IMG/VR virus record: IMGVR_UViG_3300017991_005548
Coordinates: 124,001-188,000 of that record
DNA: 64,000 bases
Reading direction: 5' to 3' (one strand)
Shown here: one piece after another, positions 3,027-64,000 of the stretch
How the letters are laid out: the number at the start of each line of letters is the position of its first letter
How positions within the stretch are numbered: position 1 is the first letter of the stretch
The notes under the pieces: model-generated
The model's database searches: none
What the model was told of the DNA's origin: nothing
The model's input: the letters and a program-made list of their open reading frames with translations, nothing else
Program-made: the position numbers and the translations under genes

Positions 3027-3674
3027 GCAAAAATACGAAAATTCAACAAAACCCATTTCCTCAGGTACATTTTCATATCTAACAACAAACCCATTTTCGA
3101 GCAATTCATAGACATAAAGTCTTGGAAAATCGAATGGGCCTGGATACTCGTTTGAAGTTGTGCTACTGTCACTACTTAAAGATTGGCTTGAACTACTGGA
3201 TGAGTCTTTTGAGCTAGAACTGGACGTACTGTCTGAACTAGGAGTATCTTCGCTACTGGTGCTGGAAGAATCTAATGAGCTTGAACTAGAGGAATACTCT
3301 TGTGAGCTTGAACTAGGAGATCCTAAGCTACTTGAAGAAGATTCGCTTGCCTCTGTTGAGCTACTACTGCTTGATGAGTCTTTTGAGCTTGAAGAACTGG
3401 ATTCAGTAGAAAGTGAAATTGAAGTAAGACTGGATTCAGAAGTTGGGCTTGATGAGCTTGATGAAGATATTCCCCCTATTGATAAACTTGATTCACTAGA
3501 AGAACTATATTCAATAGCTGGATTATAAATAGGTATAGAGGCCCATGTGATAATGGCACTCGTTATAGGATAACCAGTTATGATAGTAATATATCCATCT
3601 CCTGAACCAGCGTAAGCCTTCTTTCCTGTCAGGGGATAGTTATCAGATCTTCTTAAATCGTATCGTCTTATCAT
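3021..3674 (-). CDS. Small putative virion protein: beta-rich domain interrupted by a ~120-aa Ser-rich tract
   Basis: ATGA overlap with the upstream giant gene. Beta-strand-like N- and C-terminal parts (YITIITGYPITSAIITW / LYVYELLENGFVVRY..FSYFC) flank a poly-Ser tract. Confidence 0.75.
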   Translation of the reverse strand: MIRRYDLRRSDNYPLTGKKAYAGSGDGYITIITGYPITSAIITWASIPIYNPAIEYSSSSESSLSIGGISSSSSSSPTSESSLTSISLSTESSSSSSKDSSSSSSSTEASESSSSSLGSPSSSSQEYSSSSSSLDSSSTSSEDTPSSDSTSSSSSKDSSSSSSQSLSSDSSTTSNEYPGPFDFPRLYVYELLENGFVVRYENVPEEMGFVEFSYFCL

Positions 3675-6600
3675 TCTGGTAGCCTTTTGCTTATTGGAAC
3701 GTTTATAATAGTTCCATCACTTGACCTCGGAATCCTTTTGGAAATATTATACATTACTCCAATATGATGGATAACTGCGACCTCATCAGTGAAATTTGTT
3801 ACTCTTGTTGCGACTCTGAATGATGACGCAAAGAACAAATCCATAAATATAGTTGTCGATGGGTCCTGTGGAGCCAAGAATGTAATCGTCCCTTCAATAT
3901 TATTGGCCGCGTATTCTGAAGAATCAATCAAAGTCCCTTGAGTCTCATCCAGTCCAAGTCTATAAACATTCAGTGTAAAGTTTGCATTCCATCGACCATT
4001 AACAGCCGTATAAGTTTTGAAATCTTCTGTTTGTAATAATTCATTAAACCTTGTGGGCAATATCGTATGTTGATCTGGAATGATGTTATAGTACTCTTCT
4101 GGTCTCAAGGATTCACTTTGAGTCATAAGGTATTCTACAGTAGAGTTCTCTGGGACATCTGCTTCGCTAGTTATATGAATTGAAGAAATGTATTCGTCAT
4201 CGTCCAAGTTCACTGAGATTGGTTTGAAGAAAATAACGAATTCTCTTGGGTTGTAATAATCAACTTCTACTCCACCGTTAATTACTGGGGTTTGGAAATC
4301 AGAGTTTCCAACGAGTTTGATCTCATATTGAATATATTTCTGCAAAGCATCAATTGACTTGTCATGTTCATAAGGAATTGAATAGTCAATGAAGTCAGTC
4401 CAGTCAGAATATGTAATCCCATCTACACTAGTTCTTATTCTGTAGGTTACTTCTGCTCCTGTAGGAACGGTAACTCCCGCTATTACAGTAGTGTCTGGGA
4501 TATTGGGATTCTCAAAGACAATCGTCCCAGTAAGAGTTGTTGTGTTAATTTGTAAATTATTCCCTGATGCGATCTCATTACAAATACTATTTATTTGGGC
4601 TGAAGTGCTGTTATCTAAGTAGAATACAGACGATCCTCCCTCCTCTCCATATTTCTCAAGCAAGATAGAGTCAGATGCATGGGGTTGCCCTAATTGAATC
4701 GGAATTATCTGAACTTCACCCTCTCCATCAACAAAGTTGACAGTTTGTACAGCTTGATTTAAAGAATTCTCGGATGTATTCTCGTCGCCATCTGTGACAA
4801 TGATTACAAATTTCTTATAGTCTTTGTAATCTTCGTTATTTGTTTGATATTGGACCAATTGCTCTGCGGCTCTTTTTACTGCATCATGCAATTGACTTGC
4901 ACCAAAGAAACCAAATGAATCGATTGCAGAGGCCAAGTAGATATCATCACTTGTTAACTCTGGGACTCTATGTCTAATGGATGGATACCATTGTTGAATA
5001 CTGGCCACATTGATGATGAATTGTCTTTCGGAAAGATAACCATCAGACGTTGCAGAAACTCTGGCCTTAATATGCATGTAATCTCTTTTTACTCCTGCTC
5101 CCATTACCAAGAATCCAGGATCAGTTCCTTCTTCGTCTTCTGGTGGTTTGTATGGAAGTAGTTCAACAGTAATACGAGATCCATCAGTTACAATCTCTTC
5201 TGGTACGACAATTACATTCCCGATATCGTCAACGTACTGATACTCAGGGAACTTCGCATAAACACGAATATCAAAACCTCTTTCAGTTTCTTCGATATCG
5301 GTAGCAGTATAGAATGTTGCGGACGTATCTTCACTTCCAGCAGGGCCAGCAACTCCTGATTGAGATGAAGCTTCTTCTTCGTCCTCATAATCTAATATAA
5401 AGATTGGTTCACCATTATTAAGGTCGTTCCCCAATTCTATCTTAGTAGCAAGTCGTCTTGCCAATTCAGTTCCAGCAGGCACTTCGAGCGTAGCAAACAT
5501 CATTCTGTTGCCTTCTGGATTCACAGGTTCATTTTCATATGGTTGCGAATTTGTGGGATCGTATCTAACTGTTCCATTTACAACAAAGTCTGTATCAATA
5601 TTCTTTGTTGGAAGAATGTTCGTCATGGCAACACATCTGACATTATGAGAGTGACTTAACTGCTCATCTGATTCATAGCTGGTAAACGTATGAGTATGAT
5701 TGCCAATTGAGCCGAACAAATTAATCGTACTTGTCGTAGTGCCATTCCCATTGATATCTAAGCTAATTACATGAGTGTGACTGCTTACTACTTCACCTCC
5801 GCTATCTTCGTCATATACGTCTGAACGAATTAAACCAGACTGAACAGAATAGTCAGACAAAGAAATGTCTTGGTTGGGACCGACAATCAAACAACCATCA
5901 ATCAGGTTTCTTGTATCCTTCATCTGAGGTAACTGTCCACCAGAAGCATTACTCTCTTCGCAAATTCCACTTTCAAATGTCACTTTTGGCAATGGATACT
6001 CTATTACTGACTCAAAATCGGTTCCCTCATTAATTGTGAGTTGATTGAGAATTGGTTGGCCTTTCCAAGTCAATTCAGCATAGATTCTTGCAGTAGTAAC
6101 TCCATCTCTGACAAAATTAGTCTCATATTTTAGCTCAATACCAAGGGGTTCCACATATTGTTGTAGTGGTTTTGGAATTCTAATGCCACCACCAGGAGTG
6201 GGGAGTGGCCTTCCATTGGCGATTTCTCCTCTTCTGTATCCCCCTTCTTCCTTTCTGTAAGAGGTATATGCTTCAACCTGACTTAACCAAGGCTCTCTAA
6301 AGATCTCACGTTCTCCAAGAGGTTGCTGATGTCCAATATTTTTGTTTTTAGGAATGGCTGTTAACTCAAGCCTATCTGTTTGCCAAGTGGACCTTCTAGG
6401 GTTTGAATTGAATGTTGTTAAAGTTCTTGGTAAATCATTCGGTTGTCCCAAACCTCTAAGCCTTTTTACACCATCCTCTCCAACGAAAATGTCAGTTGGG
6501 TTGAAGTCATCTTGTAAATCCACTACAATTTTTGCGTTTGGATTACTTTCTCCATCAGCGTAGATAGGTGTCAGAGCGTCTTTTGCATAAAAAATGAATG

Positions 6601-9600
6601 AATCATCCTCATCTCCAAAGTTCTGACCAGTCAAGCTAACGATCCTTCTAACTTTTCTTACATATCCAGATGGATGGAAAACTTCAATATCTACATTAAC
6701 ATCCACAATTGGAGGGCAAAGTTCTGCCGCCGCCGCACCCGCTTCCCTTGGTTCAACTGGCTCTATTGGCCCAATGAATACCCCTCCAGCCCAACCATTA
6801 TCAGTAACACTTGAGCTTGGCTCAACATTAAATTGTTTGGCTGATCTAAAAGAGAAGTTTACTTGGACGTTATCTTCAACAACTTCACTAGCGTCAAGAT
6901 ATTCCACGCCAGTCCCTATCTCATAAACTTCATTTTCAGCAGGGACCAAAACGCCTGGATTTACAGAAGTTATAGTAACTGGATTCGCTATGAAGAACAT
7001 ATCTGCTAATATTTGCTCATGTTGATCTCTGTCCCCAAACGATACAGAAGCTTCGATAAATAACAAGGAAACAATATCACTCGTTGGTATTGTTATAGAG
7101 GCTTTGCCATTAACTATTTCTAAAGAGAATTGATACTGCTCAAACTGTTTGGCATATGTCCATTCTGCTGGATCTTGATAGAAAAGTCCGCTTTCTTCCT
7201 CAGTATCTTGTTGAACAGATCCACCAACAAGTTCAATGTATTGATTAATGATGTCATTTGCGTTAGTAGATCTGAGTCCAGTTCCAGAACTTGCACTTGG
7301 TGCGCTATCCGTCTCATTAACAGATTCAAGAACTTCTTCGAACGGATTGTTTTGAACTATTTCTCTCCATTGATCGATAGCTGTTTTGGGTGTTTCCACA
7401 GGCTCCCCATTTTCATCAACAGCCACATTTTCCAATGGTCTTATATTAGCAAATTGTTGAGTTGTTGGATATGAAGAATCTTTATAAACAACATTTGATG
7501 CTGTTGCATCCAAATCAATCACTCTATTTGTATACAGAGTTATATTAATGAATTGATCGTTAGCTAAAACAAACTCATCAGCCACAATATAATTAAGAGT
7601 AATTGTACTGCCATCAGAAGCATGATATCCTCTAACATACCTTTTCTCATATCGTGGAAAACAATCTAAGCTATCTTCATCTTTTGGAGCGGCTAGATAA
7701 TATTGGACCCGATCTGATTCAACATAAGTACTGTCAATAACAATAGGGGAAATAAAAGAAACTTCAAATGGATCTAGATACAATCTAGCAAGAGTCCTCC
7801 CAGTTTCACCCATAAAATCGGCATATGCGAAAATCTCATAATCTTTCGAGAAGAATAAAGGATTTTCTATGCCAGGGATATTCAGCCCTTCAAAAGTTTT
7901 CTCCTCATATTCAGTGGCAAAACTCTGCATAGATGACGTAGCCAAACCATTAGAGGTATATATTGGAGTTTCGATTACATAATCGACATCTTCTTCTGTG
8001 GCATCAGTTTCTTCAGCAGTTGGTAATTCTGTGGCCGTTTCTTGATCCCCATCATTTTGCTCTAATTGAGCTACAATATCCGTTTCAGGAGAGTATCTGA
8101 GTAATCGACTTAAATCTTCTTCTTTGTCTTTTACTGTTTCCAATATATCTTCAACAATAGGAAGTACCCTTGCACAAACGTTACCATCAACAGTTGGCAT
8201 ATCAAGAGTTTGCCTCTGAGTAAATTTTTCTGCAAGATTCAAATCTTCATAAGGAGTTGATGGTGGAACTCTGTCGATATCATATGGTTTTAATAATGAT
8301 GGATCAACATCTTTGTCATTAACAATTGGAGTCACATCAACGCTAAGTATCTCTGTCGCAAGAATATTATCTGTTGGAGTTAACTTCTCATCTGACGATT
8401 CGTTAAGTCTTATGGTTGTTCCCAATTCAGCAGAAACATCAAACAAAAGTGGATCGACAATATCAATGTATGGCCCAAGATTTGGATCAGTTCCAATCTC
8501 ATCAATTTTGGTTGTTTGGATGTTACCTGATTTATCTAGAATATCAATAATACTTTCTCTGAAATACCCCTCAGTAGATTGTACATAAATTCTTTTTTGG
8601 CCAGCAAACGATGGGTATGTTACAAAGGCTGATTCTATTTTGTCTTTTGCAAAAATGTCTGGCTCTTTATCAACTAACAAATTGACTTCTGTTCCGTCAG
8701 GGAACGGAGTTCCATCTTTCTCAAAGAAACTCATTGGAAGAAGGGCTGTCTGCCCAAAGAAGAAGATGTTATAACTCACCCATTCACTAAATGCTTCGAA
8801 ATCCCACTCTAAATAGTAACCATCTGAATTCTGCAAATAAAAGACGACATCTCTTGAGACCTTAGTATCTCTAACAAGGATGTTTGCGGTTGATCCGTTA
8901 ATGTTTGTTATTTTGTTATAAGAACTGTCTTGAACAATACTGCCAGCTAAACTATTATTTGTGACAGCGAGGCGCACACCAGGATCGAAGGTTATTGTAT
9001 TACTATCAATCTCTGTGATTGTATGGCCAATATTAGCGGCATCCCCTTGTAAGATATCTATTACATCTCCAACTTCAAAATCAGAAGCGTCTTCAACTGT
9101 TACAGTTGTGTCTCCAACATACAAAATGCTAGTAATATTGCTTTGCGTTATTCCTGCATTTGTTAGTAGCTTTCTGGAGATAAGATTTGTAGATGCAACG
9201 ATATCTATGGACTCTTCATTATTTGGGGCATTATTCCCAAGAGTAATTGAAGGAGATTCACTGCCAGGATAAAATAACTGCCAATTAGTAAGATTTACAT
9301 CACTAATAACATTGAAGTCAACTTTGAAATCTCCAATATTGTATGTATGGTTATTTTCAAGAGTCTTAAATCCATAAGCAATCATGGGATCTTCAACAGA
9401 AACAGCAGTAACTGATGAGAAATCTATTGTCGCATCACCAGTTCCAGAAACCAGATTCAAAGTCCCACTATCAATTGGACTAGTGTTACCATATGTAATT
9501 AAAGAAATCTGATCACTTTTTAGCTTATGTTGAACCGTAAACTCAGCACCATTATTCTCATAAACAGCGTCAACATCAGCCTGAGAACCCGAAACATCAA

Positions 9601-11587
9601 AGATGTAAGTTGTTCTACTTGGGTTATTCAGGTCTAGGTTAATCGTTGCGAATGTCCCAAGTCCTGCTGTAATAGTGGATACATCAACATCAGAACCCCC
9701 GAAGGTGAACATATCAAACTTTATGTCAGACGGATAGTAGGTTTTAAATCTATTTACTAAGCACTCAACGATGTTTTGTCGGTTGTTGTATCTGTCCATC
9801 ATCCCCATACTTCCAGAACTATCTACAACAAATGAGAGTATTGCATCAGAGTACTCAATTTCACCATCAACAATGTCATCTTCAATGGTTATCGGGTCTG
9901 TGGCAGGAGGTGTTGTTATAGTACTGTTTCCTGGATCGAAAGGGTCAAAGTTACCAACAACTCTTAAAGCAAAAACGGAATTGTAAAGGTCTTCCCAAGT
10001 AGTCTCATCTTTACTTGTCCATGCAAAAGTGTCTGAATCAGCATTTTTCTCATCATATGCCCATAATACAAAATTATCTTCATCTCCATTGTGGCGCAAT
10101 GTGATGGAAAGATATCCATTACTAGGAGTTGTTTCATCCATTAAATCGAAATCGAACGCATACCAATCGTCTTTAACAATTGTTGAGGCATGAAGTGAGG
10201 CCAAATGGAGTTCGCTTTTAGGAGTCCCATCATCATAACAGTCAGATATGGACATCCTTATCCAATAATTTGATGTTCCTCTTGCCCTGTACAAGAATAC
10301 ATAAACCTTACCAATACTGTATTCCGAATCATAGACTTTGAATGTTTGTGCAAGTCTATTTCTTATGTTTGGGTTGGCCGCAGAAGACAAACCTAATAGC
10401 AATGGTTTTGTTTGGTTCCAAAAGAGACCCGAACTAGAAGAGCTTGAGGAAACATTTGCTTCACTTTCACTACTGGTACTGGAAGAATCAATACTTGAAC
10501 TACTAGAGGTTGAATTACTTGTTGGACTGGATGAAGAAGAGTTTGACTGTGAACTTTCCGATTGAGAACTATGCCCAAGGCTTGAAGAAGATGAGCTTGA
10601 ATCAAGAGAACTTGAACTAGAAGAGCTACTTGTTGTAACTGTGCTGGATGAGTAACCACCCGAATCAGAAGAGCTTGAATCAAGAGAACTTGAACTACTG
10701 CTAGAACTTGAGCTAAATTGGTTACAAGATAGGGCTAAGGTATTCGGAAATGGCAATAGGGTTCCATCCCAGTCAACTGTACCAGATAATCCACTATTGT
10801 TTTGTTCAATAAGAGTTATTGTTCCTGCGCCAGTCCTTTGACCGACAGCTATTAAGTTGATTAAGCCAACCTCCCTATAAACTCTGACCTGTTGAATTGC
10901 TCCTTGGACAAACAAACCAACATACATATTGCAATTGGTAGTGTTTCCATCTCCCATCCCTGAAAAAGTCCAGTTTGTGAAGTAAGCACAATTGCCCCCT
11001 TCGCAGAATGGACTTGTACAACATTGGGAGCTACTTGAGCTTGGAGATTGAGTCGATTGACTGCTTGTACTTGAAGAATCAATAGAGCTAGACGAACTAG
11101 AGGTGCTTCTGTCGATACAATATATTATGCCTGAATAAGAGAAGTCAAGTGGAGTCCCATCCCAATTTACTTGTCCAGTTATCCCGCTATTATCTCTTTC
11201 TTCAAGATCTATATCTGAGGCTACCAATGAAGTAACTTGCCCCAAAGCTATGATATTAAAATATGTTGGGTCTTGGTATAGTTCAACCTGCTGAGTGTTA
11301 GTTGCTGGGAAGAACACCGTTCTTACATAAATAATTTCATAATCAAGACTTACCCCAATAAGATTCCACCCAGTTAGATGAGCACAAGCAGTTCCTTCGC
11401 ATTCTGGGTATTGACAGTATCCCGAACTACTAGAGCTTGAGGAAGAGTCTATACTCGAAGATGAGCTACTAGAAGTAGAAGAAGAATCTATACTCGAAGA
11501 TGAGCTACTAGAAGTAGAAGAAGAATCTATGCTCGAACTCGAACTTGAACTTTCGCTATATTGAAAACTTGAACTTGAACTTGACAT
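3671..11587 (-). CDS. Giant (2638 aa) tail appendage/adhesin-like structural protein with Ser-rich N-terminus, two Cys modules, a split vWA (MIDAS) domain and an HxH triad
   Basis: vWA motifs FVVDSSGSM (~aa 588) and GASQLHDAV...VIIVTDGDEN (~aa 2230-2270). Duplicated C..P.CEG..CA..T.W...QQV..Y...IA.GQ...NSG..G.V.WDG module. HTH/HTH/HSH triad. Lies within the tail-gene block. Confidence 0.8.
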   Translation of the reverse strand: MSSSSSSFQYSESSSSSSSIDSSSTSSSSSSSIDSSSTSSSSSSSIDSSSSSSSSGYCQYPECEGTACAHLTGWNLIGVSLDYEIIYVRTVFFPATNTQQVELYQDPTYFNIIALGQVTSLVASDIDLEERDNSGITGQVNWDGTPLDFSYSGIIYCIDRSTSSSSSSIDSSSTSSQSTQSPSSSSSQCCTSPFCEGGNCAYFTNWTFSGMGDGNTTNCNMYVGLFVQGAIQQVRVYREVGLINLIAVGQRTGAGTITLIEQNNSGLSGTVDWDGTLLPFPNTLALSCNQFSSSSSSSSSSLDSSSSDSGGYSSSTVTTSSSSSSSSLDSSSSSSSLGHSSQSESSQSNSSSSSPTSNSTSSSSSIDSSSTSSESEANVSSSSSSSGLFWNQTKPLLLGLSSAANPNIRNRLAQTFKVYDSEYSIGKVYVFLYRARGTSNYWIRMSISDCYDDGTPKSELHLASLHASTIVKDDWYAFDFDLMDETTPSNGYLSITLRHNGDEDNFVLWAYDEKNADSDTFAWTSKDETTWEDLYNSVFALRVVGNFDPFDPGNSTITTPPATDPITIEDDIVDGEIEYSDAILSFVVDSSGSMGMMDRYNNRQNIVECLVNRFKTYYPSDIKFDMFTFGGSDVDVSTITAGLGTFATINLDLNNPSRTTYIFDVSGSQADVDAVYENNGAEFTVQHKLKSDQISLITYGNTSPIDSGTLNLVSGTGDATIDFSSVTAVSVEDPMIAYGFKTLENNHTYNIGDFKVDFNVISDVNLTNWQLFYPGSESPSITLGNNAPNNEESIDIVASTNLISRKLLTNAGITQSNITSILYVGDTTVTVEDASDFEVGDVIDILQGDAANIGHTITEIDSNTITFDPGVRLAVTNNSLAGSIVQDSSYNKITNINGSTANILVRDTKVSRDVVFYLQNSDGYYLEWDFEAFSEWVSYNIFFFGQTALLPMSFFEKDGTPFPDGTEVNLLVDKEPDIFAKDKIESAFVTYPSFAGQKRIYVQSTEGYFRESIIDILDKSGNIQTTKIDEIGTDPNLGPYIDIVDPLLFDVSAELGTTIRLNESSDEKLTPTDNILATEILSVDVTPIVNDKDVDPSLLKPYDIDRVPPSTPYEDLNLAEKFTQRQTLDMPTVDGNVCARVLPIVEDILETVKDKEEDLSRLLRYSPETDIVAQLEQNDGDQETATELPTAEETDATEEDVDYVIETPIYTSNGLATSSMQSFATEYEEKTFEGLNIPGIENPLFFSKDYEIFAYADFMGETGRTLARLYLDPFEVSFISPIVIDSTYVESDRVQYYLAAPKDEDSLDCFPRYEKRYVRGYHASDGSTITLNYIVADEFVLANDQFINITLYTNRVIDLDATASNVVYKDSSYPTTQQFANIRPLENVAVDENGEPVETPKTAIDQWREIVQNNPFEEVLESVNETDSAPSASSGTGLRSTNANDIINQYIELVGGSVQQDTEEESGLFYQDPAEWTYAKQFEQYQFSLEIVNGKASITIPTSDIVSLLFIEASVSFGDRDQHEQILADMFFIANPVTITSVNPGVLVPAENEVYEIGTGVEYLDASEVVEDNVQVNFSFRSAKQFNVEPSSSVTDNGWAGGVFIGPIEPVEPREAGAAAAELCPPIVDVNVDIEVFHPSGYVRKVRRIVSLTGQNFGDEDDSFIFYAKDALTPIYADGESNPNAKIVVDLQDDFNPTDIFVGEDGVKRLRGLGQPNDLPRTLTTFNSNPRRSTWQTDRLELTAIPKNKNIGHQQPLGEREIFREPWLSQVEAYTSYRKEEGGYRRGEIANGRPLPTPGGGIRIPKPLQQYVEPLGIELKYETNFVRDGVTTARIYAELTWKGQPILNQLTINEGTDFESVIEYPLPKVTFESGICEESNASGGQLPQMKDTRNLIDGCLIVGPNQDISLSDYSVQSGLIRSDVYDEDSGGEVVSSHTHVISLDINGNGTTTSTINLFGSIGNHTHTFTSYESDEQLSHSHNVRCVAMTNILPTKNIDTDFVVNGTVRYDPTNSQPYENEPVNPEGNRMMFATLEVPAGTELARRLATKIELGNDLNNGEPIFILDYEDEEEASSQSGVAGPAGSEDTSATFYTATDIEETERGFDIRVYAKFPEYQYVDDIGNVIVVPEEIVTDGSRITVELLPYKPPEDEEGTDPGFLVMGAGVKRDYMHIKARVSATSDGYLSERQFIINVASIQQWYPSIRHRVPELTSDDIYLASAIDSFGFFGASQLHDAVKRAAEQLVQYQTNNEDYKDYKKFVIIVTDGDENTSENSLNQAVQTVNFVDGEGEVQIIPIQLGQPHASDSILLEKYGEEGGSSVFYLDNSTSAQINSICNEIASGNNLQINTTTLTGTIVFENPNIPDTTVIAGVTVPTGAEVTYRIRTSVDGITYSDWTDFIDYSIPYEHDKSIDALQKYIQYEIKLVGNSDFQTPVINGGVEVDYYNPREFVIFFKPISVNLDDDEYISSIHITSEADVPENSTVEYLMTQSESLRPEEYYNIIPDQHTILPTRFNELLQTEDFKTYTAVNGRWNANFTLNVYRLGLDETQGTLIDSSEYAANNIEGTITFLAPQDPSTTIFMDLFFASSFRVATRVTNFTDEVAVIHHIGVMYNISKRIPRSSDGTIINVPISKRLPE
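11448..11525. repeat. Perfect 39-bp tandem duplication (codes SSTSSSSSSSIDS-type unit)
   Basis: tctatactcgaagatgagctactagaagtagaagaagaa occurs at 11448-11486 and 11487-11525. Confidence 0.9.
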
Positions 11588-22146: not shown

Positions 22147-24585
22147 TTATTGATTTACCAAATTGATTTTATCACCACTAAACATCAAAGCAAACTCATC
22201 CACAACAGGTAAGCTTGTATCATATGAAACCATCCTGATACCAACTCTTATATTGTCAATTTCTGGCATTTCGAAAAACTCATCAGGATTTATAATTGTG
22301 TAATCATCCCAGTCAGTTGAATTATCTGCATTATACCCAAATGTTATCTCAGTATTTGTTGGTTGAGTAATTGTCCCTGTCAACAAACCTTTCTTGATAT
22401 CAGATTCATTCTCAAGTGAGAACTTAACGGTATAGAAGTACTGTGCTCTTTTGGTTGAATATACCAAATTCACACTTGTAACTTTTGGAGTGAGGTCGTT
22501 GGAATTTGTTTCCATTAGAACCTGGAATTGAGCAAACTGCCCTTCAAGACGAACGTTGTTTAAATCCCTTACAATTGGATTAGCTTCACCATTATTTGAA
22601 TTGTAACAAGTTCCCCAAGGTGTTTGGCGCATCTCAGAGATAGAGTTTCCAGTTCTTATACATATCGTTATTTTAGTATTGTCTGGTTTATCTTCAGACC
22701 AAATGAGTTGCTTCCAGAAACCAATGTCTTCTTGAACTTGAAGGACGGGACTAACAAAAACAGCGGTCACCCTCTCAACTGGAATTGCAGTTGCGTCTTC
22801 CATATATTTCCATTTTTCTATCTCTTTGTCCTCATTGATTTCAATAATTCTTTTATATAAAGCATACATAAAGGTTTCAGCGGTTGTTTCGGAAGGATTG
22901 CCAAACCCATTTGTGACATCAGCATAAACCAACCTTTCCCCCGTTCTGTAGGCATTTAAAGTAGCCTCATCTGCATATAAGATTCTGCCGAAAGATGTTG
23001 CAAACAACACTCCACCATTTTGGGTATCTTTGGTCATGAAAGTAATCTCTTCACCATTATTAAAATGTATTATTGGAATTCCTCTGCTTTGACTGGTATC
23101 TGGTACACCTTCAGGCTCTGGTTCTGCTTCTGTATCAGTTGTTTCTGGTATACTAAACAACAATGAGAAGTCAGCATCACTTAAATCATAATCAGTCTCT
23201 GCTGGGGTTTCAGAAGCTGACAACCATTCGATGTACATTTGATAGTCCGTTCCATCCGCTAGTGACAATGGTATGTTCCACTCAAAAGTACCATCATTAG
23301 AAGTTTTCGGAGTTATTTCCAAGACCTCTGCTCCACTTTTATACAAAGCGAGTTTGACAGCATCGTTTACTCCTCTTGTTGAAGACCAAGTAATATCAAC
23401 AGTATCTCCAATTAGCCAAACCTCACCGCCATTTGGAGATGTCATGACTACTGTTTTCCCTGCATTAGGATCTTCCTCTGGTTCAGTTGGAGTCTCCTCT
23501 TCTGCTGGAGTAATATCTCCACAATGAACTAGATACAGTTTGTCTCCCATGGCCGCTAAATTGGCTCCTGTGTCAATATTCAGGAGTTGTTGTACCCCTT
23601 CTGCGTCAGTATCGAAGATGGGAGTGAGATTTCCTTGATAGTAGTTAAAAACTCTACCCCAGTTTCCACCCCCCACAGTGACTGTAGAACCATCTTGAGC
23701 AAAACTACCGATCCCAACCAATCTGTTATATGGGAATATATCAAGGATATCTTCATTTGACAACCCATCGGTTTTTATGATATCTTTTGTATTTATAAAT
23801 TCGTATGTTGTATGAGAGAAGACATTCTTAGAAACCCTTCTGGTTGTTGCAACATTATCTGGCTGTGATATTTCAATCTGCCAATTACTTCCGTCATATG
23901 AAACTACATTTTGAGCGTCCATTGCCAGGTAGATTTTGTTATCAAATGACGACATCTGGTTAATTGACGTTCCATAAGGTCTATAGAAAACAACCCATGC
24001 TTGATTTACAGCATCAAACCTATAGACAATTGCAGGTCTAGACGTTGCCGCATAAATTTCCCCATTATAGGATACAAAATTAACTACTTCTCCATTGGAA
24101 GTTTGATCAAGTGTAACCGCATTTGTTGTTAGATTTATCCTATAAATTAAACCATTAGGAGAAGTCCCTGCGAAAAGAGTTGATCCATTGACAAGCAATG
24201 CTGTGACAAGCTGATCGTCTAGTTGATAAAAGTTCTCCCATATGTATCTATCTTTACTCCTAATGATCATTCCGTCATTGCTGGTTCCAGCATAAGCATA
24301 TGTCGAATCGAATGTGATTGACCAAATAGATTTCTCAGAACTCTTTTCATAGATGAATGGCAATAGTCTCTCATCTTGGTAGTCGAGATAAGAAGAGCTA
24401 GAACTAGAACTGGAATCGATAGAACTACTAGATGAGCTAGATTCGGATTGAGAACTAGAACTAATGCCAAAACTCGAACTAGATGAACTACTAGTTGAGC
24501 TTGTACTCGATTCAGAAGAATACAAGTAACTAGAGCTAGAACTAGAGTCTAGTGAACTTGATGAACTAGATGAGTTATTGGCCAT
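22147..24585 (-). CDS. Structural protein: N-terminal Ser tract, beta-propeller, Ig-like (Kre9/KNH-N-like, SPNGGE) domain, C-terminal beta-sandwich
   Basis: Propeller blades (YAYAGT, LFAGTSPNGLIY, EIYAAT); MTSPNGGEVW...VKLALYK...GTFEWNIP; W..L.W...P..T.I.I.IR...QF.Q..V......P.V..V module. Confidence 0.8.
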   Translation of the reverse strand: MANNSSSSSSSLDSSSSSSYLYSSESSTSSTSSSSSSSFGISSSSQSESSSSSSSIDSSSSSSSSYLDYQDERLLPFIYEKSSEKSIWSITFDSTYAYAGTSNDGMIIRSKDRYIWENFYQLDDQLVTALLVNGSTLFAGTSPNGLIYRINLTTNAVTLDQTSNGEVVNFVSYNGEIYAATSRPAIVYRFDAVNQAWVVFYRPYGTSINQMSSFDNKIYLAMDAQNVVSYDGSNWQIEISQPDNVATTRRVSKNVFSHTTYEFINTKDIIKTDGLSNEDILDIFPYNRLVGIGSFAQDGSTVTVGGGNWGRVFNYYQGNLTPIFDTDAEGVQQLLNIDTGANLAAMGDKLYLVHCGDITPAEEETPTEPEEDPNAGKTVVMTSPNGGEVWLIGDTVDITWSSTRGVNDAVKLALYKSGAEVLEITPKTSNDGTFEWNIPLSLADGTDYQMYIEWLSASETPAETDYDLSDADFSLLFSIPETTDTEAEPEPEGVPDTSQSRGIPIIHFNNGEEITFMTKDTQNGGVLFATSFGRILYADEATLNAYRTGERLVYADVTNGFGNPSETTAETFMYALYKRIIEINEDKEIEKWKYMEDATAIPVERVTAVFVSPVLQVQEDIGFWKQLIWSEDKPDNTKITICIRTGNSISEMRQTPWGTCYNSNNGEANPIVRDLNNVRLEGQFAQFQVLMETNSNDLTPKVTSVNLVYSTKRAQYFYTVKFSLENESDIKKGLLTGTITQPTNTEITFGYNADNSTDWDDYTIINPDEFFEMPEIDNIRVGIRMVSYDTSLPVVDEFALMFSGDKINLVNQ

Positions 24586-58000: not shown

Positions 58001-58029
58001 TATTCAAATAAATGAATCACAAGACCTTT
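58001..58029 (-). promoter_or_regulatory. Putative late promoter AAAGG-N19-GAATA
   Basis: AAAGGtcttgtgattcatttatttGAATA, with identical boxes and spacing at 60431-60459 and 61450-61478. Confidence 0.65.
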
Positions 58030-58558: not shown

Positions 58559-58590
58559 TTTTTTCTTTCCTTTTTGTCTTCTGCGCCTTC

Positions 58591-58869
58591 TCATATTTCT
58601 CTCATCATTTTTGTTCCAGGCTTCATTGTTGACCTGGCCTCAGATTTGAATTTTTGTGCTTGCGCCTTAGCGTCCAATGCGGCATTCTTTACCCTTTTCA
58701 TGTAATTATGTTTTTGAATCCATTTATAAGGTAAAGATGCAATATACGTGGGAGTCCAGCCATATTCTTCAATAAAGCTGAGTTCCACAAGGTCTCTCAT
58801 AATATCAGGATCTACAGCAGTTGTTATGGACCCCGTGCTCATAAAATAGCCTAACAACTGCTCATCTAT
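58591..58869 (-). CDS. C-terminal (T) portion of the frameshifted tail assembly chaperone (gpGT-like)
   Basis: The -1 frame is open across the upstream stop (ATA GAT GAG CAG TTG TTA GGC...). YGWTP..I..LP motif is typical of the T segment. It has no clear RBS of its own. Confidence 0.8.
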   Translation of the reverse strand: MDEQLLGYFMSTGSITTAVDPDIMRDLVELSFIEEYGWTPTYIASLPYKWIQKHNYMKRVKNAALDAKAQAQKFKSEARSTMKPGTKMMREI

Positions 58870-59297
58870 TTTTTTTCCTCTTCCTCGCTCAAATAAGTTA
58901 TCTCATCATAGGCGTTGAGGATAGTTTCGGCAATCTCTGGAGCCAAACTTTTAATAGATTTCTCTGTCACTCTAACAGGGACTTGATTACCTTTGTTGTC
59001 GGTTGCTGTCGCATCCCAACTATGAATCAATTGGACAAGTCGGTTCTCTTTGTATAACTTATAATTGAATCGACGGTTTCCTTCCCCGTCCAATTCAATC
59101 CCACCTTCTTGTAAGTCATTGTAAAGCCCCCAAGTCAACTGTTTCATTTTAACAGTAATCTTCTTCAGCTTTTCCTTATCTTCATCTGTTAGGTCTTCAG
59201 AAGTTTTGAACTCTTGTTCTGAGTAGGATTGATAATGCAGTCCTATTTTTTTGTAGTAGATAATGACATCTACTGTGCTGTCTTCTTTGATAAACAT
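58866..59297 (-). CDS. Tail assembly chaperone (gpG-like)
   Basis: Immediately after the tail tube; ends EEEEKK* on the slippery GAA AAA AAA TAG; AGGAG RBS. Confidence 0.82.
   Translation of the reverse strand: MFIKEDSTVDVIIYYKKIGLHYQSYSEQEFKTSEDLTDEDKEKLKKITVKMKQLTWGLYNDLQEGGIELDGEGNRRFNYKLYKENRLVQLIHSWDATATDNKGNQVPVRVTEKSIKSLAPEIAETILNAYDEITYLSEEEEKK
58869..58875 (-). other. Programmed -1 ribosomal frameshift site A AAA AAA
   Basis: The A8 run at 58869-58876 forms an X XXY YYZ heptamer in frame just before TAG. A -1 slip enters the 58591-58857 ORF. Confidence 0.85.
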
Positions 59298-59329
59298 AGC
59301 ACAACTTTCTCCTATTGTTATGTGTTGGT

Positions 59330-59337
59330 ATTATACA
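59330..59337 (-). promoter_or_regulatory. TGTATAAT -10-like element upstream of the chaperone
   Basis: Directly follows the terminator U-tract. Shared octamer with 29385-29392 and 50605-50612. Confidence 0.45.
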
Positions 59338-59338
59338 G

Positions 59339-59366
59339 AAAAAAGCCCTCTAAAAGATAGAGGGCT
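59339..59366 (-). terminator. Rho-independent terminator after the tail tube gene
   Basis: AGCCCTCTA-TCTTT-TAGAGGGCT 9-bp stem followed by TTTTT on the minus strand. Confidence 0.8.
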
Positions 59367-59379
59367 AGAAATAGAAGGT

Positions 59380-59402
59380 GGTCCCTTTTTATTAAAGGGA
59401 CC
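59380..59402. other. Second perfect hairpin in the tail tube 3' UTR
   Basis: GGTCCCTTT-TTATT-AAAGGGACC 9-bp stem, without a clean U-tract. Confidence 0.7.
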
Positions 59403-59433: not shown

Positions 59434-60363
59434 TTATGGGGAAGCAGAAAGATCCCAAGGGAATCCAGTCTGATGGGTAACTCCCGTAAATCCAACTGTT
59501 GAAATGACAGGACCCGTATTCAAGGTAGGTTCTACCCTGTGGAATCTAACTTTCATTTCGGTTGTTGAAGATCCACCCGTACAATTACTGCTCAATCCAA
59601 ACTGGAGGGTATGTACTCCGTCTGCACAATAATCTTCGAATGTTTCAGCCCCGTTAAAGTCTGGTGCATTGTAAACAGAAAGCGTTCCAGAGATCTGTCT
59701 GATACCAGGAACAATATCGAATGGGAACAAGTCAGCTTGACCCAAACCATATACTGTTTCAATGTTGTTGTTCACGGTGAATTCGAAATTACTGAATTTA
59801 ATATCAGTCAAAACGGCAGGGATGTCGTTATTTACTGGGTCAGTTGCACCGCCAGCAATGATTGTGACGTTGACTTTATCCCAAGTAAGCAACTTTTCCG
59901 CATCAGTGAAGTGAGGTGGAGGATTGGAACCAAACGCATTTGCGCTTGTACCAATAACATCCAAAGAAAACTGAGCAACTTCACCAGCCGCTACTGAAAA
60001 ATTGAAAGTATTTACAAAGAGGTTTTCAAACAATCTGTCTCTGCTACAGAAGTAATAAAGCTGGATATCTTTAGTACTGAGACCACCACAAGCATCGCCT
60101 GCGTCATCTCTACCAGCGGCCCATTGGATCACGCTGTCTGTTCCAGATAGAAATGTTTCGGTGACGGGTCCGCTAATGCTTCCGCCAACCTCGATTTTAC
60201 CGTATACGTAGGCATCCCTGTCCCAGTCACCTGAAACAAGGTCGGGTGCCTCGATTTCTTGTCTTGCAGTGATATTAGCATCGGAGAATCGGAGTTGAGT
60301 ACCACCGATATCTGCAATACCTCTATAACCTGCATTTACTAAACCATTAGCTCCTATTGACAT
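59434..60363 (-). CDS. Major tail (tube) protein, siphovirus-type
   Basis: VGGSISGP, FNFSVAAGEVAQFSLDVIG and FSNFEFTVNNNIE...GIRQISGTLSV patterns. Strong AAGGAGA RBS, own promoter motif and terminator. Precedes the chaperone and tape measure. Confidence 0.8.
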   Translation of the reverse strand: MSIGANGLVNAGYRGIADIGGTQLRFSDANITARQEIEAPDLVSGDWDRDAYVYGKIEVGGSISGPVTETFLSGTDSVIQWAAGRDDAGDACGGLSTKDIQLYYFCSRDRLFENLFVNTFNFSVAAGEVAQFSLDVIGTSANAFGSNPPPHFTDAEKLLTWDKVNVTIIAGGATDPVNNDIPAVLTDIKFSNFEFTVNNNIETVYGLGQADLFPFDIVPGIRQISGTLSVYNAPDFNGAETFEDYCADGVHTLQFGLSSNCTGGSSTTEMKVRFHRVEPTLNTGPVISTVGFTGVTHQTGFPWDLSASP

Positions 60364-60468: not shown

Positions 60469-60822
60469 CTAAAATGCCATAGGTGCCCTGTACGACACTC
60501 CACTGCTGTATAAATCGGCGGCGTGACCATTGACATAATCGTACAAATAGTCCTCTATCATATCATTAATATCTGTATACGCAGAGGCCGTATCGGTTCT
60601 TCTCTGCTTAACACCATTCAAGACCAATTCATCCAAACTCATAACCAAAAGTTCAGGAAGATTAACTCCATCAGTATCTCTTGCGCTTGTTCTAATCCTG
60701 AAGTAATAGCTTACCTCAGAAATAAAAGTACCAGCACTTTGTGCGAGAATATTACCTAAGAAATCAACATTAATCGTTCTGGTGTTGTTAGCTGTCTCAT
60801 CATATATTCTAAATGTGGCCAT
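60469..60822 (-). CDS. Small putative virion protein, paralog of 60835-61416
   Basis: MATFRIYDE..TRTINV..IL..Y..IRTS.R..DG...P aligns with MATVQIFHE..TSTVSV..IL..Y..ISTS.R..DG...P. AGGAGG RBS. Confidence 0.75.
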   Translation of the reverse strand: MATFRIYDETANNTRTINVDFLGNILAQSAGTFISEVSYYFRIRTSARDTDGVNLPELLVMSLDELVLNGVKQRRTDTASAYTDINDMIEDYLYDYVNGHAADLYSSGVSYRAPMAF

Positions 60823-60834
60823 TCTCTTTCCTCC

Positions 60835-61416
60835 TTAAGCAGACGAACTGCTTGACTCAGATTGAGAACTCATACTCTGAGAACTCATACTCTGAGAACT
60901 ATCACTTTGAGAACTATCAGACTGAGAACTCATACTCTGAGAGCTACTAGATTCACTTTGTGAACTTTCAGATTTTGAACTCATACTCTGCGAACTCATA
61001 CTCTGCGAACTCATGCTTTGAGTACTTGAGCTATTACTTTGTGAGCTTCCAGATACTCCACCAGAACTACTTGAACTTTCTGAGTAATTTTCAGATGAAG
61101 TCGAGCTTTCTGATTGACTGGATGAACTATCACTTGAAGACTGACCATATTCTGCTTGATCAACAAAATATTCAATCCAACCATTAACCAACTCTGTGAA
61201 GTCAGCGGCAGGTGAGGAGGCTCCAGGAGCCACATCAGCCAAATCTTTAATTAAATAGGTAGGAAACGTAGATCCATCAACCTTCCTGATACTCGTAGAT
61301 ATAAGAAGATATGAATCTCTCGTCATCAAACCATCAGACAATATGGCAGTCTGCAAATTTACAGATACTGTCGAAGTACTGCCATCTTCTTCATGAAATA
61401 TTTGAACAGTTGCCAT
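60835..61416 (-). CDS. Small putative virion protein with a free ~100-aa C-terminal Ser tract
   Basis: Folded ~90-aa N-terminal domain followed by a Ser tract that runs to the stop codon. Confidence 0.8.
   Translation of the reverse strand: MATVQIFHEEDGSTSTVSVNLQTAILSDGLMTRDSYLLISTSIRKVDGSTFPTYLIKDLADVAPGASSPAADFTELVNGWIEYFVDQAEYGQSSSDSSSSQSESSTSSENYSESSSSSGGVSGSSQSNSSSTQSMSSQSMSSQSMSSKSESSQSESSSSQSMSSQSDSSQSDSSQSMSSQSMSSQSESSSSSA
60863..61015. repeat. 15-bp tandem repeats (SQSMS/SQSDS)
   Basis: tgagaactcatactc and tgcgaactcatactc units. Confidence 0.85.
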
Positions 61417-61449
61417 GTTTACAACCCCTAAATATAAAGTTTTAAGTCT

Positions 61450-61478
61450 TATTCTATATCAAATTGCCGAAACCCTTT
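61450..61478 (-). promoter_or_regulatory. Putative late promoter AAAGG-N19-GAATA
   Basis: AAAGGgtttcggcaatttgatataGAATA. Confidence 0.65.
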
Positions 61479-61501: not shown

Positions 61502-62524
61502 TTAATCACTTGAGCTAGAACATTCGCAATCATCGTCAGGATCAAAGCAAATAACCTTACGATCATGCTGTGGAAATTCAAGTTCGTTGACTTCCTTACC
61601 GAACCAACTAAGTTCTGATGCCCTAAGGACTGCGCTACCCTTTTGCTTAACCCCAAATGTGACATTGTCTACACGGGCATCATAATAATATCTCTTCATC
61701 CTGATTGCTACAGCAAATTCAGACAAAGAAAAATCTGCTTCAAATTCATGATCAACTTCCAAACGGATCTCACAATCTATGATATCCCTGTTGATAATCT
61801 CGTATCGAGAACACCTTGGAGTCTCATTATCTTGAAAAGAATAATTCTGACTTTCTGTAGTAATGACAAAGTTCTCTCGATTCTCTTCTGTATCACATAC
61901 ATAAAAGTAAACGTCACCCTCCGATACTGGCCTAGTCATAGGTGCTTGATAATCATTTATGTTAATGTGCAAACTATAATTGAGTACATCATATACTGCT
62001 TTTGAATATTTACTGAGGATTCTCATGCCCTCTTCCGTTTCAACTGATTGCCCATAAACAGTAACTGTTATTCTGGACTCTTCTGATAATCCACCTTGAA
62101 GGTAAATCCATTCATTCGAAATACTGACAGGTTCAACAGTAATTGCTACAGCATCTGTTGGAATAACTTCTCTATCCCCAAAAAGAACATTCTCTTCATA
62201 AAGAGGATCATGACCTATTGTCTTCTGTATAAAAGCTCCATCAGAAACCAACCAATTATCGATAACATCAGTTGTTAACGTAATCGTTGTCGTATCAACA
62301 ATCTCTTTAATAACCGCATACTCAAATCTTTGATAATGAGGAGATGTTTCGTCATTGTAACCATAGTCAATAAGAACTATCTCTTGATTAGGATGGAAGT
62401 GAAAAGAGTTCTCTACACTAAGAGTAGTATCGCCAGTTGTCGCATCTGTTGTTAACTTAGTTTTGGCGATCAATTCTTCTTTGATCAAATCAATTATAGC
62501 ATCAACTACTCCAGTAATTTCCAT
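61502..62524 (-). CDS. Probable tail terminator/neck protein with two inserted beta domains (likely start MEITGV)
   Basis: Terminator-like core (VVDAIIDLIKEEL, AITVEP, ITVTVYG, KAVYDVL). Position between adaptor and tube. TAATG overlap at 62524. Confidence 0.6.
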   Translation of the reverse strand: MEITGVVDAIIDLIKEELIAKTKLTTDATTGDTTLSVENSFHFHPNQEIVLIDYGYNDETSPHYQRFEYAVIKEIVDTTTITLTTDVIDNWLVSDGAFIQKTIGHDPLYEENVLFGDREVIPTDAVAITVEPVSISNEWIYLQGGLSEESRITVTVYGQSVETEEGMRILSKYSKAVYDVLNYSLHININDYQAPMTRPVSEGDVYFYVCDTEENRENFVITTESQNYSFQDNETPRCSRYEIINRDIIDCEIRLEVDHEFEADFSLSEFAVAIRMKRYYYDARVDNVTFGVKQKGSAVLRASELSWFGKEVNELEFPQHDRKVICFDPDDDCECSSSSD

Positions 62525-63514: not shown

Positions 63515-63730
63515 TTATAGATCGTACAGATAATCCCCGATATTTATGAACTCAAAAGCTACATCATTTACTCTGTTCACTTTATCGGTTGTTTCTGAAT
63601 TCCTTTCACTACATTCACAAATTCCATCATACCAAGGAAAAGTACATTGCGTACATAATCCATTCGCTTTTGCCCAAGCGATATGATCTTTAAGATACTT
63701 TCGTTTCTCTTTCCGTTCTTGTTTAGTCAT
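63515..63730 (-). CDS. Small hypothetical protein with a CxxC...CxC zinc-finger-like motif
   Basis: LCTQCTFPWYDGICEC; TAATG overlap with the upstream gene. Confidence 0.65.
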   Translation of the reverse strand: MTKQERKEKRKYLKDHIAWAKANGLCTQCTFPWYDGICECSERNSETTDKVNRVNDVAFEFINIGDYLYDL

Positions 63731-63963
63731 TATTTGTTTTTCTTTTGGAAATCTGCTTGCGCTCTAATGCAAGAACCCTGAGAAACAGAATAAAATGGAC
63801 TTTTGGAATGCCTTACTTGCCAGACATCAAATGGAAACTCAGAATCGTCCAAGCATTCCTTAAACATCTTACAATATCCCTTAGGCATCGAAGTCCCCCC
63901 AGAAATTACAATTTCAATTTCACCATCAATCTCTGCGTCTTTGGACCTAAATTCCTGAGACAT
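63730..63963 (-). CDS. Small hypothetical protein
   Basis: 77-aa ORF coupled to the next gene. Confidence 0.55.
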   Translation of the reverse strand: MSQEFRSKDAEIDGEIEIVISGGTSMPKGYCKMFKECLDDSEFPFDVWQVRHSKSPFYSVSQGSCIRAQADFQKKNK

Positions 63964-64000
63964 ATGATGGATAATACGATTGATTGTCTCTTGGTAGTAA

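What the first reader, a model, noticed from the sequence alone, without database searches (positions are those of the whole stretch)
60835..61145. Ser tracts at free termini argue they are displayed elements, not just linkers
In this 193-aa protein the ~100-aa tract runs to the stop codon, and its tandem paralog (60469-60822) has the same core without the tract. The 2638-aa and 812-aa proteins begin with tracts (MSSSSSSFQYSESS, MANNSSSS). A linker needs a domain on both sides, so these look like appended modification or charge tags. This gene has its own promoter motif and sits just upstream of the tail tube gene, so it may be a high-copy tail decoration (inference).
Basis: partly seen in the sequence, partly recalled or inferred. 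Interest (0 to 1): 0.7.

Follow-up and report, generated by a model that had tools for sequence, protein, structure and literature searches.

The report
Free-ended polyserine tail on phage tail-module protein
A small protein encoded beside the tail-tube gene of an uncultured, roughly half-megabase sediment phage ends in a 100-residue, almost pure serine tail that is kept in most of its relatives in huge-phage contigs, so it is most likely a flexible surface bristle or stalk rather than a leftover linker; where it sits on the virion and whether it is chemically modified are untested.

Summary
Gene 60835-61416 (-) encodes 193 aa. Residues 1-92 are confidently folded. Residues 93-193 are disordered, 62% Ser, net charge -8, and run to the stop. 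The next gene (60469-60822) is a true paralog without the tail (hhalign E 8e-12), and the tail tube gene (PF18906) follows.

The trio is conserved in every related contig long enough to show it, down to 30-40% identity, including 160-509 kb contigs from ocean water and sediment. In 69 of 97 family members the Ser tract runs to the stop (median 51 aa). Its composition is conserved (67% Ser, acidic:basic 11:1) but its sequence is not. This copy is therefore neither a truncation nor an artefact.

The contrast "displayed, not linker" is too sharp. Two orthologs at the same locus carry an extra domain after the tract. More distant core-bearing proteins carry a LamG lectin domain or an NHL propeller there. 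Most tracts in this genome are internal linkers between adhesin-like domains.

Best reading: an orphan-fold anchor carrying a flexible polyserine stalk, usually bare and sometimes tipped with a binding domain. Virion location, copy number and modification remain inference. I rate it a new variant of known kinds.

The parts
60835..61416 (-). Gene X (P0001), 193 aa: anchor core plus polyserine tail; stop TAA at 60835-60837
   Evidence: 82 cluster representatives at E<=1e-3 with the core always N-terminal
61141..61416 (-). Core domain, residues 1-92: four beta strands plus a C-terminal helix (73-88); orphan fold
   Evidence: pLDDT about 88. No fold match: Foldseek PDB nothing, VIA-align wide best Z 4.8, ESM Atlas nothing. 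No Pfam or PHROG hit
60838..61140 (-). Polyserine tail, residues 93-193: 62% Ser, net charge -8, predicted disordered, runs to the stop
   Evidence: conserved as a feature in 69 of 97 relatives
60863..61026 (-). Tandem 15-nt (SMSSQ-type) and 45-nt repeats inside the tail: recent local expansion
61449..61477 (-). Promoter-like element AAGGGTTTC-N12-TATAGAATAA in the 85-nt gap upstream of gene X
   Evidence: Both halves are conserved upstream of the orthologous gene in the closest related contigs, and one half or the other is recognisable in more distant ones. The genome holds 8 matches to the pattern against 4.2 in shuffles, and 6 of the 8 are intergenic although only about 5% of the genome is intergenic. 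Not found by the sigma-70 scan. Function is inferred
60469..60822 (-). Gene Y (P0002), 117 aa: paralog of the core without a Ser tail, with a conserved C-terminal motif (DYxYDYxNGH...SSGV...PMxF) and a strong AAGGAGG ribosome-binding site
59434..60363 (-). Tail tube protein, 309 aa
   Evidence: PF18906 Phage_tube_2 1.2e-11; phrog_290
59344..59402 (-). Two consecutive terminator-like hairpins directly after the tube gene, followed by a TGTATAAT promoter-like site; likely 3' end of the X-Y-tube transcription unit
61502..62524 (-). Upstream gene (P0004/P0140, 340 aa; 352 aa from the TTG at 62560): candidate tail terminator (lead only); ends in CECSSSSD
   Evidence: Protein-language-model neighbours are tail or neck terminator families at 0.77-0.88. 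No Pfam, PHROG, NCBIfam or PDB sequence match. Conserved directly upstream of X in contigs up to 509 kb
11411..11584 (-). N-terminal Ser tract (residues 2-59) of the 2638-aa ORF 3671..11587
24379..24579 (-). N-terminal Ser tract (residues 3-69) of the 812-aa ORF 22147..24585
   Evidence: the protein also has a Kre9/KNH Ig-like domain

Best explanation
Gene X encodes an accessory protein of the tail module of a non-contractile-tailed huge phage. Its 92-residue orphan-fold N-terminal domain is an anchor, shared with the tail-less paralog Y encoded next to it. The two probably assemble together on or next to the tail tube. The C-terminal 100 residues are a disordered, strongly hydrated, anionic polyserine chain that starts where the last helix of the anchor ends and projects freely into solvent. 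It works as a flexible stalk. In most relatives the stalk is bare and acts as a bristle (a steric and hydration layer, or a weak multivalent contact surface). In a minority it carries a binding domain at its tip. Shown: the architecture, the disorder prediction, the paralogy, the conservation of the trio and of the tail as a feature, and the occasional distal domains. Inferred: virion incorporation, attachment site, copy number, what the bristle does, and whether the phage's glycosyltransferases modify it.
For: Architecture and disorder. Paralogy with Y. The X-Y-tube trio is present in every related locus long enough to show it: 13 of 22 metagenome loci show all three genes, 3 more show X and Y up to the contig end, and L004, L042-L044 and L045 also show the trio. 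Tail kept in 69 of 97 members, median 51 aa, 67.5% Ser, acidic:basic 257:23, sequence not conserved, and the Gly-Gln junction just before it nearly invariant. The C-terminus must point outward, because orthologs at the same locus add a domain after the tract (P0070, P0076) and more distant core-bearing proteins add Laminin_G_3 (9.6e-13) or an NHL/Vgb_lyase propeller. Ser tracts elsewhere in this genome sit in proteins carrying adhesin-type domains (LamG_3, FG-GAP, DUF285, LRR, Kre9 Ig-like), mostly as internal linkers. No sheath family was found in the 296-kb record, and the gene order tube, chaperone-like genes, 2077-aa tape-measure-sized ORF fits an exposed tube. The unit has a conserved promoter-like element upstream and twin terminators after the tube gene. 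Modification is possible but unshown: at least 7 glycosyltransferase genes, one (GT4, 553 aa) about 12 kb away in the structural region.
Against: Nothing here shows that the protein is in virions or touches the tube. The core and the paralog match no known fold or family, so no attachment mode can be borrowed from a relative. Two distant core-bearing genes (L010, L011) are not followed by a Y-type gene, and L011 has no tube gene nearby, so the core is not strictly tied to the tube. The GT4 enzyme is generic: its best solved relative is chlorovirus B736L at 8.5e-7, and GtfA-type matches are marginal. No protein kinase domain was found. No RNA runs were listed, so the level and timing of expression are unknown.
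Confidence: 0.5

Rival explanations
1. Neck or collar component rather than a high-copy tube decoration. X and Y form a low-copy ring (6-12 copies) at the head-proximal end of the tail, next to the terminator, and the Ser tails act like whiskers.
For: X and Y lie between a terminator-like gene and the tube gene. Small proteins of about 100 aa in this position in siphophages are usually connector or completion proteins (established gene-order knowledge; inference here).
Against: Neither model resembles solved terminator, completion or adaptor folds (best Z 4.8 and 2.7). The terminator call for P0004 is only a language-model lead.
Confidence: 0.2
2. Non-virion assembly factor. X, perhaps with Y, is a chaperone for tube or tail assembly, and the acidic disordered tail is a solubility tag or entropic tag that is not built into the particle.
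For: The best, non-significant, fold neighbours of the core are small secretion chaperones (Z 4.1-4.8). Acidic disordered tails are common in chaperone-like proteins (general knowledge).
Against: Chaperone-like genes already sit in the canonical place downstream of the tube (143, 88 and 188 aa, the last with a weak Phage_TAC_7 hit). A lectin-type or propeller domain at the end of the tract in relatives makes little sense for an intracellular chaperone. The Z values are below the tool's noise level.
Confidence: 0.15
3. Relic or artefact. The tract is a leftover linker after loss of a distal domain, a truncated gene or an assembly error, and has no function of its own.
For: Some orthologs do have a domain after the tract. 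Tract length and sequence drift freely.
Against: 69 of 97 members end in the tract, across identities down to about 30%, and the composition is maintained. The stop is followed 12 nt later by the paralog's start with its ribosome-binding site. The DNA is identical in independent assemblies and runs. A useless 50-100 aa tail would be lost quickly.
Confidence: 0.05
4. Modification tag. The main role of the free tracts is to be O-glycosylated (or phosphorylated), giving the tail a glycan or charge coat. The bare peptide is only the substrate.
For: At least 7 phage glycosyltransferases, one inside the structural region. There is precedent for glycans on C-termini of capsid and tail tube subunits of mycobacteriophages (Freeman et al. 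2023, as cited in PMC12619734 and PMC11256854). Sugar-nucleotide-type enzymes lie near a related gene in L011.
Against: No specific link between any of these enzymes and protein substrates. Phage glycosyltransferases more often act on DNA or host envelope (PMC12619734). No Pkinase domain in the 296-kb record.
Confidence: 0.2

Closest known systems
Polyserine linkers (PSL) of marine and estuarine polysaccharide degraders (Saccharophagus degradans, Cellvibrio japonicus, Teredinibacter turnerae)
   Same: Long runs dominated by Ser that serve as flexible spacers in extracellular modular proteins (PMC2386152, citing Howard et al. 2004). Most tracts in this phage genome behave the same way, as internal linkers in proteins with lectin-like, propeller or LRR domains.
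   Different: PSLs are defined as lying between two domains of secreted enzymes. Here the tract is at a free C-terminus of a phage tail-module protein, and that free end is the conserved state.
Glycosylated C-termini of capsid and tail tube subunits in mycobacteriophages such as Che8 (Freeman et al. 2023)
   Same: A terminal extension on a siphophage virion protein that is displayed on the surface and modified by phage-encoded glycosyltransferases (as summarised in PMC12619734 and PMC11256854). This phage also encodes many glycosyltransferases.
   Different: There the extension is on the major capsid and tube subunits themselves, and glycosylation was measured. Here it is on a separate small protein, is far longer and nearly pure Ser, and no modification is shown. 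I could not read the primary paper.
Folded tail or capsid decoration domains: lambda gpV C-terminal Ig-like domain, T5 pb6 Ig-like domain, SPP1 gp17.1* FN3 extension, T4 Hoc (from my own knowledge)
   Same: Non-essential, outward-facing additions to a phage tube or capsid, thought to give weak adherence to surfaces or glycans. Relatives of X with a LamG lectin or NHL propeller tip fit this logic.
   Different: Those are folded Ig-like or FN3 domains fused to the structural subunit. X is a separate protein whose displayed part is disordered polyserine, and it has no Ig or FN3 hit.
Serine-rich repeat glycoproteins of Gram-positive bacteria (GspB, Fap1, SraP), glycosylated by GT4 GtfA/GtfB (from my own knowledge)
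   Same: Very long Ser-rich repeats that form an extended stalk projecting a binding region. The modifying enzymes are GT4 family, as is the phage enzyme in the structural region.
   Different: Read directly from the sequence, X has no signal peptide, no LPXTG anchor and no strict SX dipeptide periodicity. The match to GtfA is marginal (E 8e-4 against a cut-off of 575 bits).

Membership tests
Polyserine linker (PSL) | Run of tens of residues dominated by Ser, encoded by a mix of Ser codons | tested here: met
   63 of 101 residues are Ser and all six codons are used
Polyserine linker (PSL) | Lies between two functional domains | tested here: not met
   In this copy the tract runs to the stop. 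The feature is met in a minority of relatives (P0070, P0076, P0105, P0124) and in most other tracts of the genome
Phage tail terminator / tail completion proteins (gpU-like, gp17-like, PF13554, PF23961 and similar) | Sequence or fold similarity to a terminator or completion family | tested here: not met
   No Pfam or PHROG hit for X or Y. Fold searches: best Z 4.8 (X) and 2.7 (Y), with no terminator among the hits. The Y profile finds nothing in PDB sequences
Ig-like / FN3 tail decoration domains | Ig-like, FN3 or BIG domain detectable in the displayed part | tested here: not met
   No Pfam family in X at E<=0.1; the tail is predicted disordered
Glycosylated virion proteins (mycobacteriophage type) | Phage encodes glycosyltransferases | tested here: met
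   Three PF00535 and four PF13692 matches in the 296-kb record; a GT4 gene at L006:12750-14411
Glycosylated virion proteins (mycobacteriophage type) | Glycan covalently attached to the terminal extension of a virion protein | not testable with these tools
   Needs mass spectrometry or glycan staining of virions or co-expressed protein
Serine-rich repeat glycoprotein (SRRP) | Signal peptide, cell-wall anchor and SX dipeptide repeats | tested here: not met
   Direct reading of the sequence. The N-terminus MATVQIFHEEDG has no hydrophobic signal, the C-terminus is SSSSSA, and the repeats are SMSSQ or SDSSQ pentamers
Phage tail tube protein (for the neighbour at 59434-60363) | Match to a tube family above the curated cut-off | tested here: met
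   PF18906, 45.2 bits against a cut-off of 27

The most novel reading that the evidence does not exclude
The free polyserine tails of X, and of the other terminal tracts in this genome, are substrates of the phage's own glycosyltransferases. The long non-contractile tail of a half-megabase phage would then carry a mucin-like glycan brush built on a dedicated anchor-plus-bristle protein. That would be a new kind of virion coat, serving as a shield against adsorption to sediment particles or as a multivalent adhesin.
Probability: 0.15. Interest if true: 0.8.

Novelty: new variant of a known kind. Interest (0 to 1): 0.5.

Why it matters
Disordered low-complexity tracts in phage structural proteins are usually dismissed as linkers. 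Here a free-ended polyserine tail is the conserved state of a protein family that sits in a fixed place in the tail module of related huge-phage contigs from sediments and ocean water. About 7% of all residues encoded by the 296-kb record of this phage lie in such tracts. If the tails are displayed, they are a simple and evolvable way to coat or extend a virion surface: bare as a hydrated brush, or tipped with lectin-like domains. They would also be an obvious candidate substrate for the many glycosyltransferases that huge phages carry. The anchor domain is a new small fold that could be used to find further displayed proteins.

Tried and rejected
1. Structure prediction of tube + Y + X core (complex prediction). 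The score was 0.21, under the mark of 0.32, so there was no verdict. It is not evidence for or against binding.
2. Fold searches of both models against PDB (Foldseek and VIA-align wide), BFVD, ESM Atlas and, for Y only, AlphaFold DB clusters. Nothing rose above noise. The secretion-chaperone-like hits at Z 4-4.8 are rejected as non-significant.
3. Pfam, PHROGs and NCBIfam on X, Y and P0004, and profile searches of Y and P0004 against PDB sequences. No family.
4. GenBank phage collection by DNA and protein. No relatives.
5. IMG/VR scan. It returned only the same phage on a 476-kb contig.
6. RNA runs to test the promoter and expression level: none was listed. DNA runs show no tract variation.
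7. Phosphorylation idea (S-x-E motifs). No Pkinase domain in the 296-kb record, so it is left as unsupported.
8. Idea that the N-terminal tracts of the 2638-aa and 812-aa ORFs are artefacts of start-codon choice or hidden fusions. The tract follows the ATG at once and there is an in-frame stop upstream. For the 2638-aa ORF there is no other Met in the first 90 residues. Fusion to the upstream ORF by frameshift cannot be excluded but nothing suggests it.
9. Amber recoding as a way to extend X or Y. X stops at TAA, Y at TAG with a TAA 7 codons later (read), and TAG ends 38 of 296 ORFs. Rejected.
10. Search in this genome for the small G/Y/W-rich domain of P0076: nothing.
11. The primary papers Freeman 2023 and Howard 2004 are not held. 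They are cited through papers that summarise them.

Full report
**Where the window lies.** The window is bases 124001-188000 of a 296,327-bp IMG/VR record labelled 'provirus' (98% complete by CheckV, 38.5% G+C). The same genes stand on metagenome contigs of 523,871, 524,692 and 476,248 bp, so the record is probably a cut from a megaphage of about half a megabase. Public runs that hold the stretch are sediment and seawater metagenomes. Nothing similar is in the GenBank phage collection.

**The observation.** ORF 60835..61416 on the minus strand encodes 193 residues.
- Residues 93-193 contain 63 Ser, 12 Gln, 6 Glu, 6 Met, 3 Asp and a single Lys (net charge -8) and run to the TAA stop.
- Against the genome's 11% Ser this has a binomial probability of about 5e-35.
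- All six Ser codons are used, which argues for selection on the residue. A 15-nt unit has also been amplified in tandem at 60863-61026.
- The tract DNA is identical in four assemblies, and contigs of three sequencing runs carry the stretch with no differences listed in the tract.
- AlphaFold2 with 13 homologs folds residues 1-90 confidently (pLDDT about 88: four strands and a C-terminal helix at 73-88) and leaves most of the tail below pLDDT 50.
- The next gene, 60469..60822 (117 aa), is a paralog of the core. Whole-protein BLASTP missed it, tblastn gave E 6.5e-4, and profile-profile comparison gave 97.5% probability, E 8.4e-12 over 85 columns. In place of the Ser tract it has a conserved 20-residue C-terminus.
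- The gene after that, 59434..60363, is a tail tube protein (PF18906, phrog_290).

**How common the tracts are.** In my ORF set for the 296-kb record, 34 of 297 proteins have Ser tracts, and 7% of all residues lie in them. One 4276-aa ORF is 52% Ser. In 27 of the 34 proteins all tracts are internal. Seven proteins have a tract at a terminus. The tract-bearing proteins that I scanned carry Laminin_G_3, FG-GAP, DUF285, LRR and Kre9-type Ig-like domains, plus a weak BclA_C match. These are the kinds of domains found on adhesins. Ser tracts are therefore this phage's general flexible spacer in what look like surface proteins. That matches the polyserine linkers described for marine polysaccharide degraders (PMC2386152).

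**The family.** A profile of the core finds 82 cluster representatives (at most 50% identity to each other) among 1.84 billion proteins, always with the core at the N-terminus. Counting these and closer homologs gives 97 sequences:
- 69 have a Ser tract that runs to the stop. Lengths are 12-190 aa (median 51), with 67.5% Ser and 257 acidic against 23 basic residues.
- 10 have a tract followed by something else.
- 18 have no tract. Several of these are fragments or a subfamily with a short hydrophobic C-terminus.

The tail sequence is not conserved: units such as SSSSEGYSE, SSSENYSE or SMSSQ, or forty consecutive Ser. The junction (Gly-Gln, then Ser) is nearly invariant. A feature that keeps its composition, charge and position while its sequence drifts, across identities down to about 30%, is under selection.

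**The exceptions.** They show which way the tail points.
- P0070 (247 aa) and P0076 (202 aa) have core, tract, then about 90 non-Ser residues.
- Both are followed by a Y-type paralog (hhalign E 5e-35 and 2e-24), and P0070 is then followed by a PF18906 tube gene. They are orthologs at the same locus.
- The extra segment of P0070 is homologous to a repeated segment of P0109 (E 4e-4), so it is a real domain.
- More distant proteins with the same core carry Laminin_G_3 (9.6e-13, above the cut-off) or an NHL/Vgb_lyase-type propeller after the tract. Those two genes are not followed by a Y-type gene, and the longer locus (L011) has no tube gene nearby.

So the core is an N-terminal anchor and the tract a stalk. 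Its far end is solvent-exposed and can carry a binding module. The bare stalk is simply the commonest form. The tail is a displayed element in its own right, but it is the same element that serves as a linker elsewhere.

**Genomic setting.** Of 22 related metagenome loci, every one long enough shows X (tailed), then Y (tail-less). The tube gene follows in all of them except L033 and L035, where my profile found no tube gene: 13 loci show all three genes and 3 more show X and Y up to the contig end. A distant relative from a Logan assembly shows the trio as well. A wider block is conserved in contigs of 160, 368 and 509 kb from Tara Oceans, JGI and NCBI: 67 aa, 126 aa, an actin-like Volactin homolog, 233 aa, 76 aa, a protein of about 340 aa, X, Y, tube, and three chaperone-sized genes. 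In each of these contigs X has a Ser tail to the stop.

The 340-aa protein upstream (61502-62524) has tail and neck terminator families as its language-model neighbours (0.77-0.88). That is a lead, not a finding, because sequence and profile searches give nothing. No sheath family is detectable in the 296-kb record. The order tube, chaperone-like genes, 2077-aa ORF fits a non-contractile tail, in which the tube surface would be exposed.

**Regulation.** The 85-nt gap upstream of X contains AAGGGTTTC-N12-TATAGAATAA at 61449-61477.
- Both halves recur upstream of the orthologous gene in the closest related contigs. One half or the other is recognisable in more distant ones.
- In this genome the pattern occurs 8 times against 4.2 in shuffles, and 6 of the 8 are intergenic.
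- It differs from the TGTATAAT motif that is most enriched in the genome's intergenic regions, and the sigma-70 scan missed it.
- Two strong hairpin terminators follow the tube gene.

No RNA data could be found to test this.

**What it most likely does.** I commit to this: an anchor-plus-bristle accessory protein of the tail module, probably assembled together with its paralog on or next to the exposed tube. Its polyserine chain projects outward as a hydrated, anionic, flexible stalk. The chain is bare in this phage and tipped with a binding domain in some relatives. The architecture and its conservation are shown. Attachment, copy number and effect are inferred. I put about 0.5 on this reading as a whole. 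The rivals are:
- about 0.2 on a low-copy neck location;
- about 0.15 on a non-virion assembly factor;
- about 0.05 on relic or artefact;
- about 0.2 that the tails are chiefly glycosylation substrates. This overlaps with the first two readings and is not exclusive of them.

For glycosylation, the phage has at least seven glycosyltransferase genes, one inside the structural region. There is precedent for glycans on the C-termini of capsid and tube subunits of mycobacteriophages (Freeman et al. 2023, as summarised in PMC12619734 and PMC11256854). But the nearby enzyme is a generic GT4 whose best solved relative is a chlorovirus enzyme. The phage also encodes five tRNA-Ser genes covering all six Ser codons among its 46 tRNAs. 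That fits a heavy demand for Ser but is not specific evidence.

**Comparison with known systems.** The tract meets the compositional definition of a polyserine linker but not the positional one. X and Y are not members of any terminator, completion, Ig-like decoration or serine-rich-repeat glycoprotein family by the tests I could run. The closest functional analogies are decoration domains on phage tubes and capsids, and the glycosylated C-terminal extensions of mycobacteriophage virion proteins. The new points are a dedicated small anchor protein of an orphan fold, a free-ended polyserine tail as the conserved state, and its fixed place in the tail module across related huge-phage contigs. 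I rate it a new variant of known kinds, with interest about 0.5.

Noticed in passing
window 63730-64000, continuing to genome 187730-188818 (L006:1730-2818, minus strand): A 362-aa actin-like protein (PF25216 Volactin, 3.3e-63; weaker MreB_Mbl) sits in the structural block five genes upstream of X. It is conserved in the same place in related contigs of 160-509 kb. An actin homolog inside a phage tail/neck gene block is unusual.
   Followed up: partly
genome 261791-274621 (outside the window; L040): A 4276-aa ORF that is 52% serine, with tracts of up to about 1200 residues. An ORF at genome 1-3798 that runs off the end of the record is 50% Ser.
   Followed up: no
whole record: IMG/VR labels the 296-kb record a provirus, yet the same genes lie at about 440-450 kb on 524-kb contigs and at about 391-404 kb on a 476-kb contig. 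The record is probably a trimmed piece of a megaphage of about half a megabase.
   Followed up: partly
genome 197395-197469 (L006, minus strand): A tRNA with anticodon CUA (amber suppressor, called 'Pyl' by ARAGORN) lies in the structural region; the record holds 46 tRNA genes in all. TAG still ends 38 of 296 ORFs and coding density is 94.6% under table 11, so there is no sign of wholesale recoding.
   Followed up: partly
genome 14524-25516 and 79377-88307 (L036-L038): Two arrays of paralogous 190-490 aa proteins, each with an N-terminal module of about 50 residues, then a short Ser tract, then a variable domain (Laminin_G_3 or DUF285). They look like a diversified set of tethered binding proteins.
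   Followed up: partly
window 58028-59297 (minus strand): Three small genes after the tube gene (143, 88 and 188 aa). The last two overlap by 4 nt, and the 188-aa product has a weak Phage_TAC_7 hit and a KPKVEEP repeat region. This could be a chaperone pair with a programmed frameshift.
   Followed up: no
window 59344-59402 and about 59310-59340 (minus strand): Twin terminator hairpins directly after the tube gene, followed at once by CTGTATAATA, the extended -10-like motif most enriched in this genome's intergenic regions.
   Followed up: partly
genome 32800-52000 and 198750-200411: A cluster of at least six glycosyltransferase genes (GT2 and GT1/GT4 types), plus one 553-aa GT4 inside the structural region whose best solved relative is chlorovirus B736L.
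   Followed up: partly
window 61505-61520 (minus strand), C-terminus of P0004: The candidate terminator protein ends in ...DDDCECSSSSD. The consensus of its homologs also ends in a short Ser-rich stretch.
   Followed up: no
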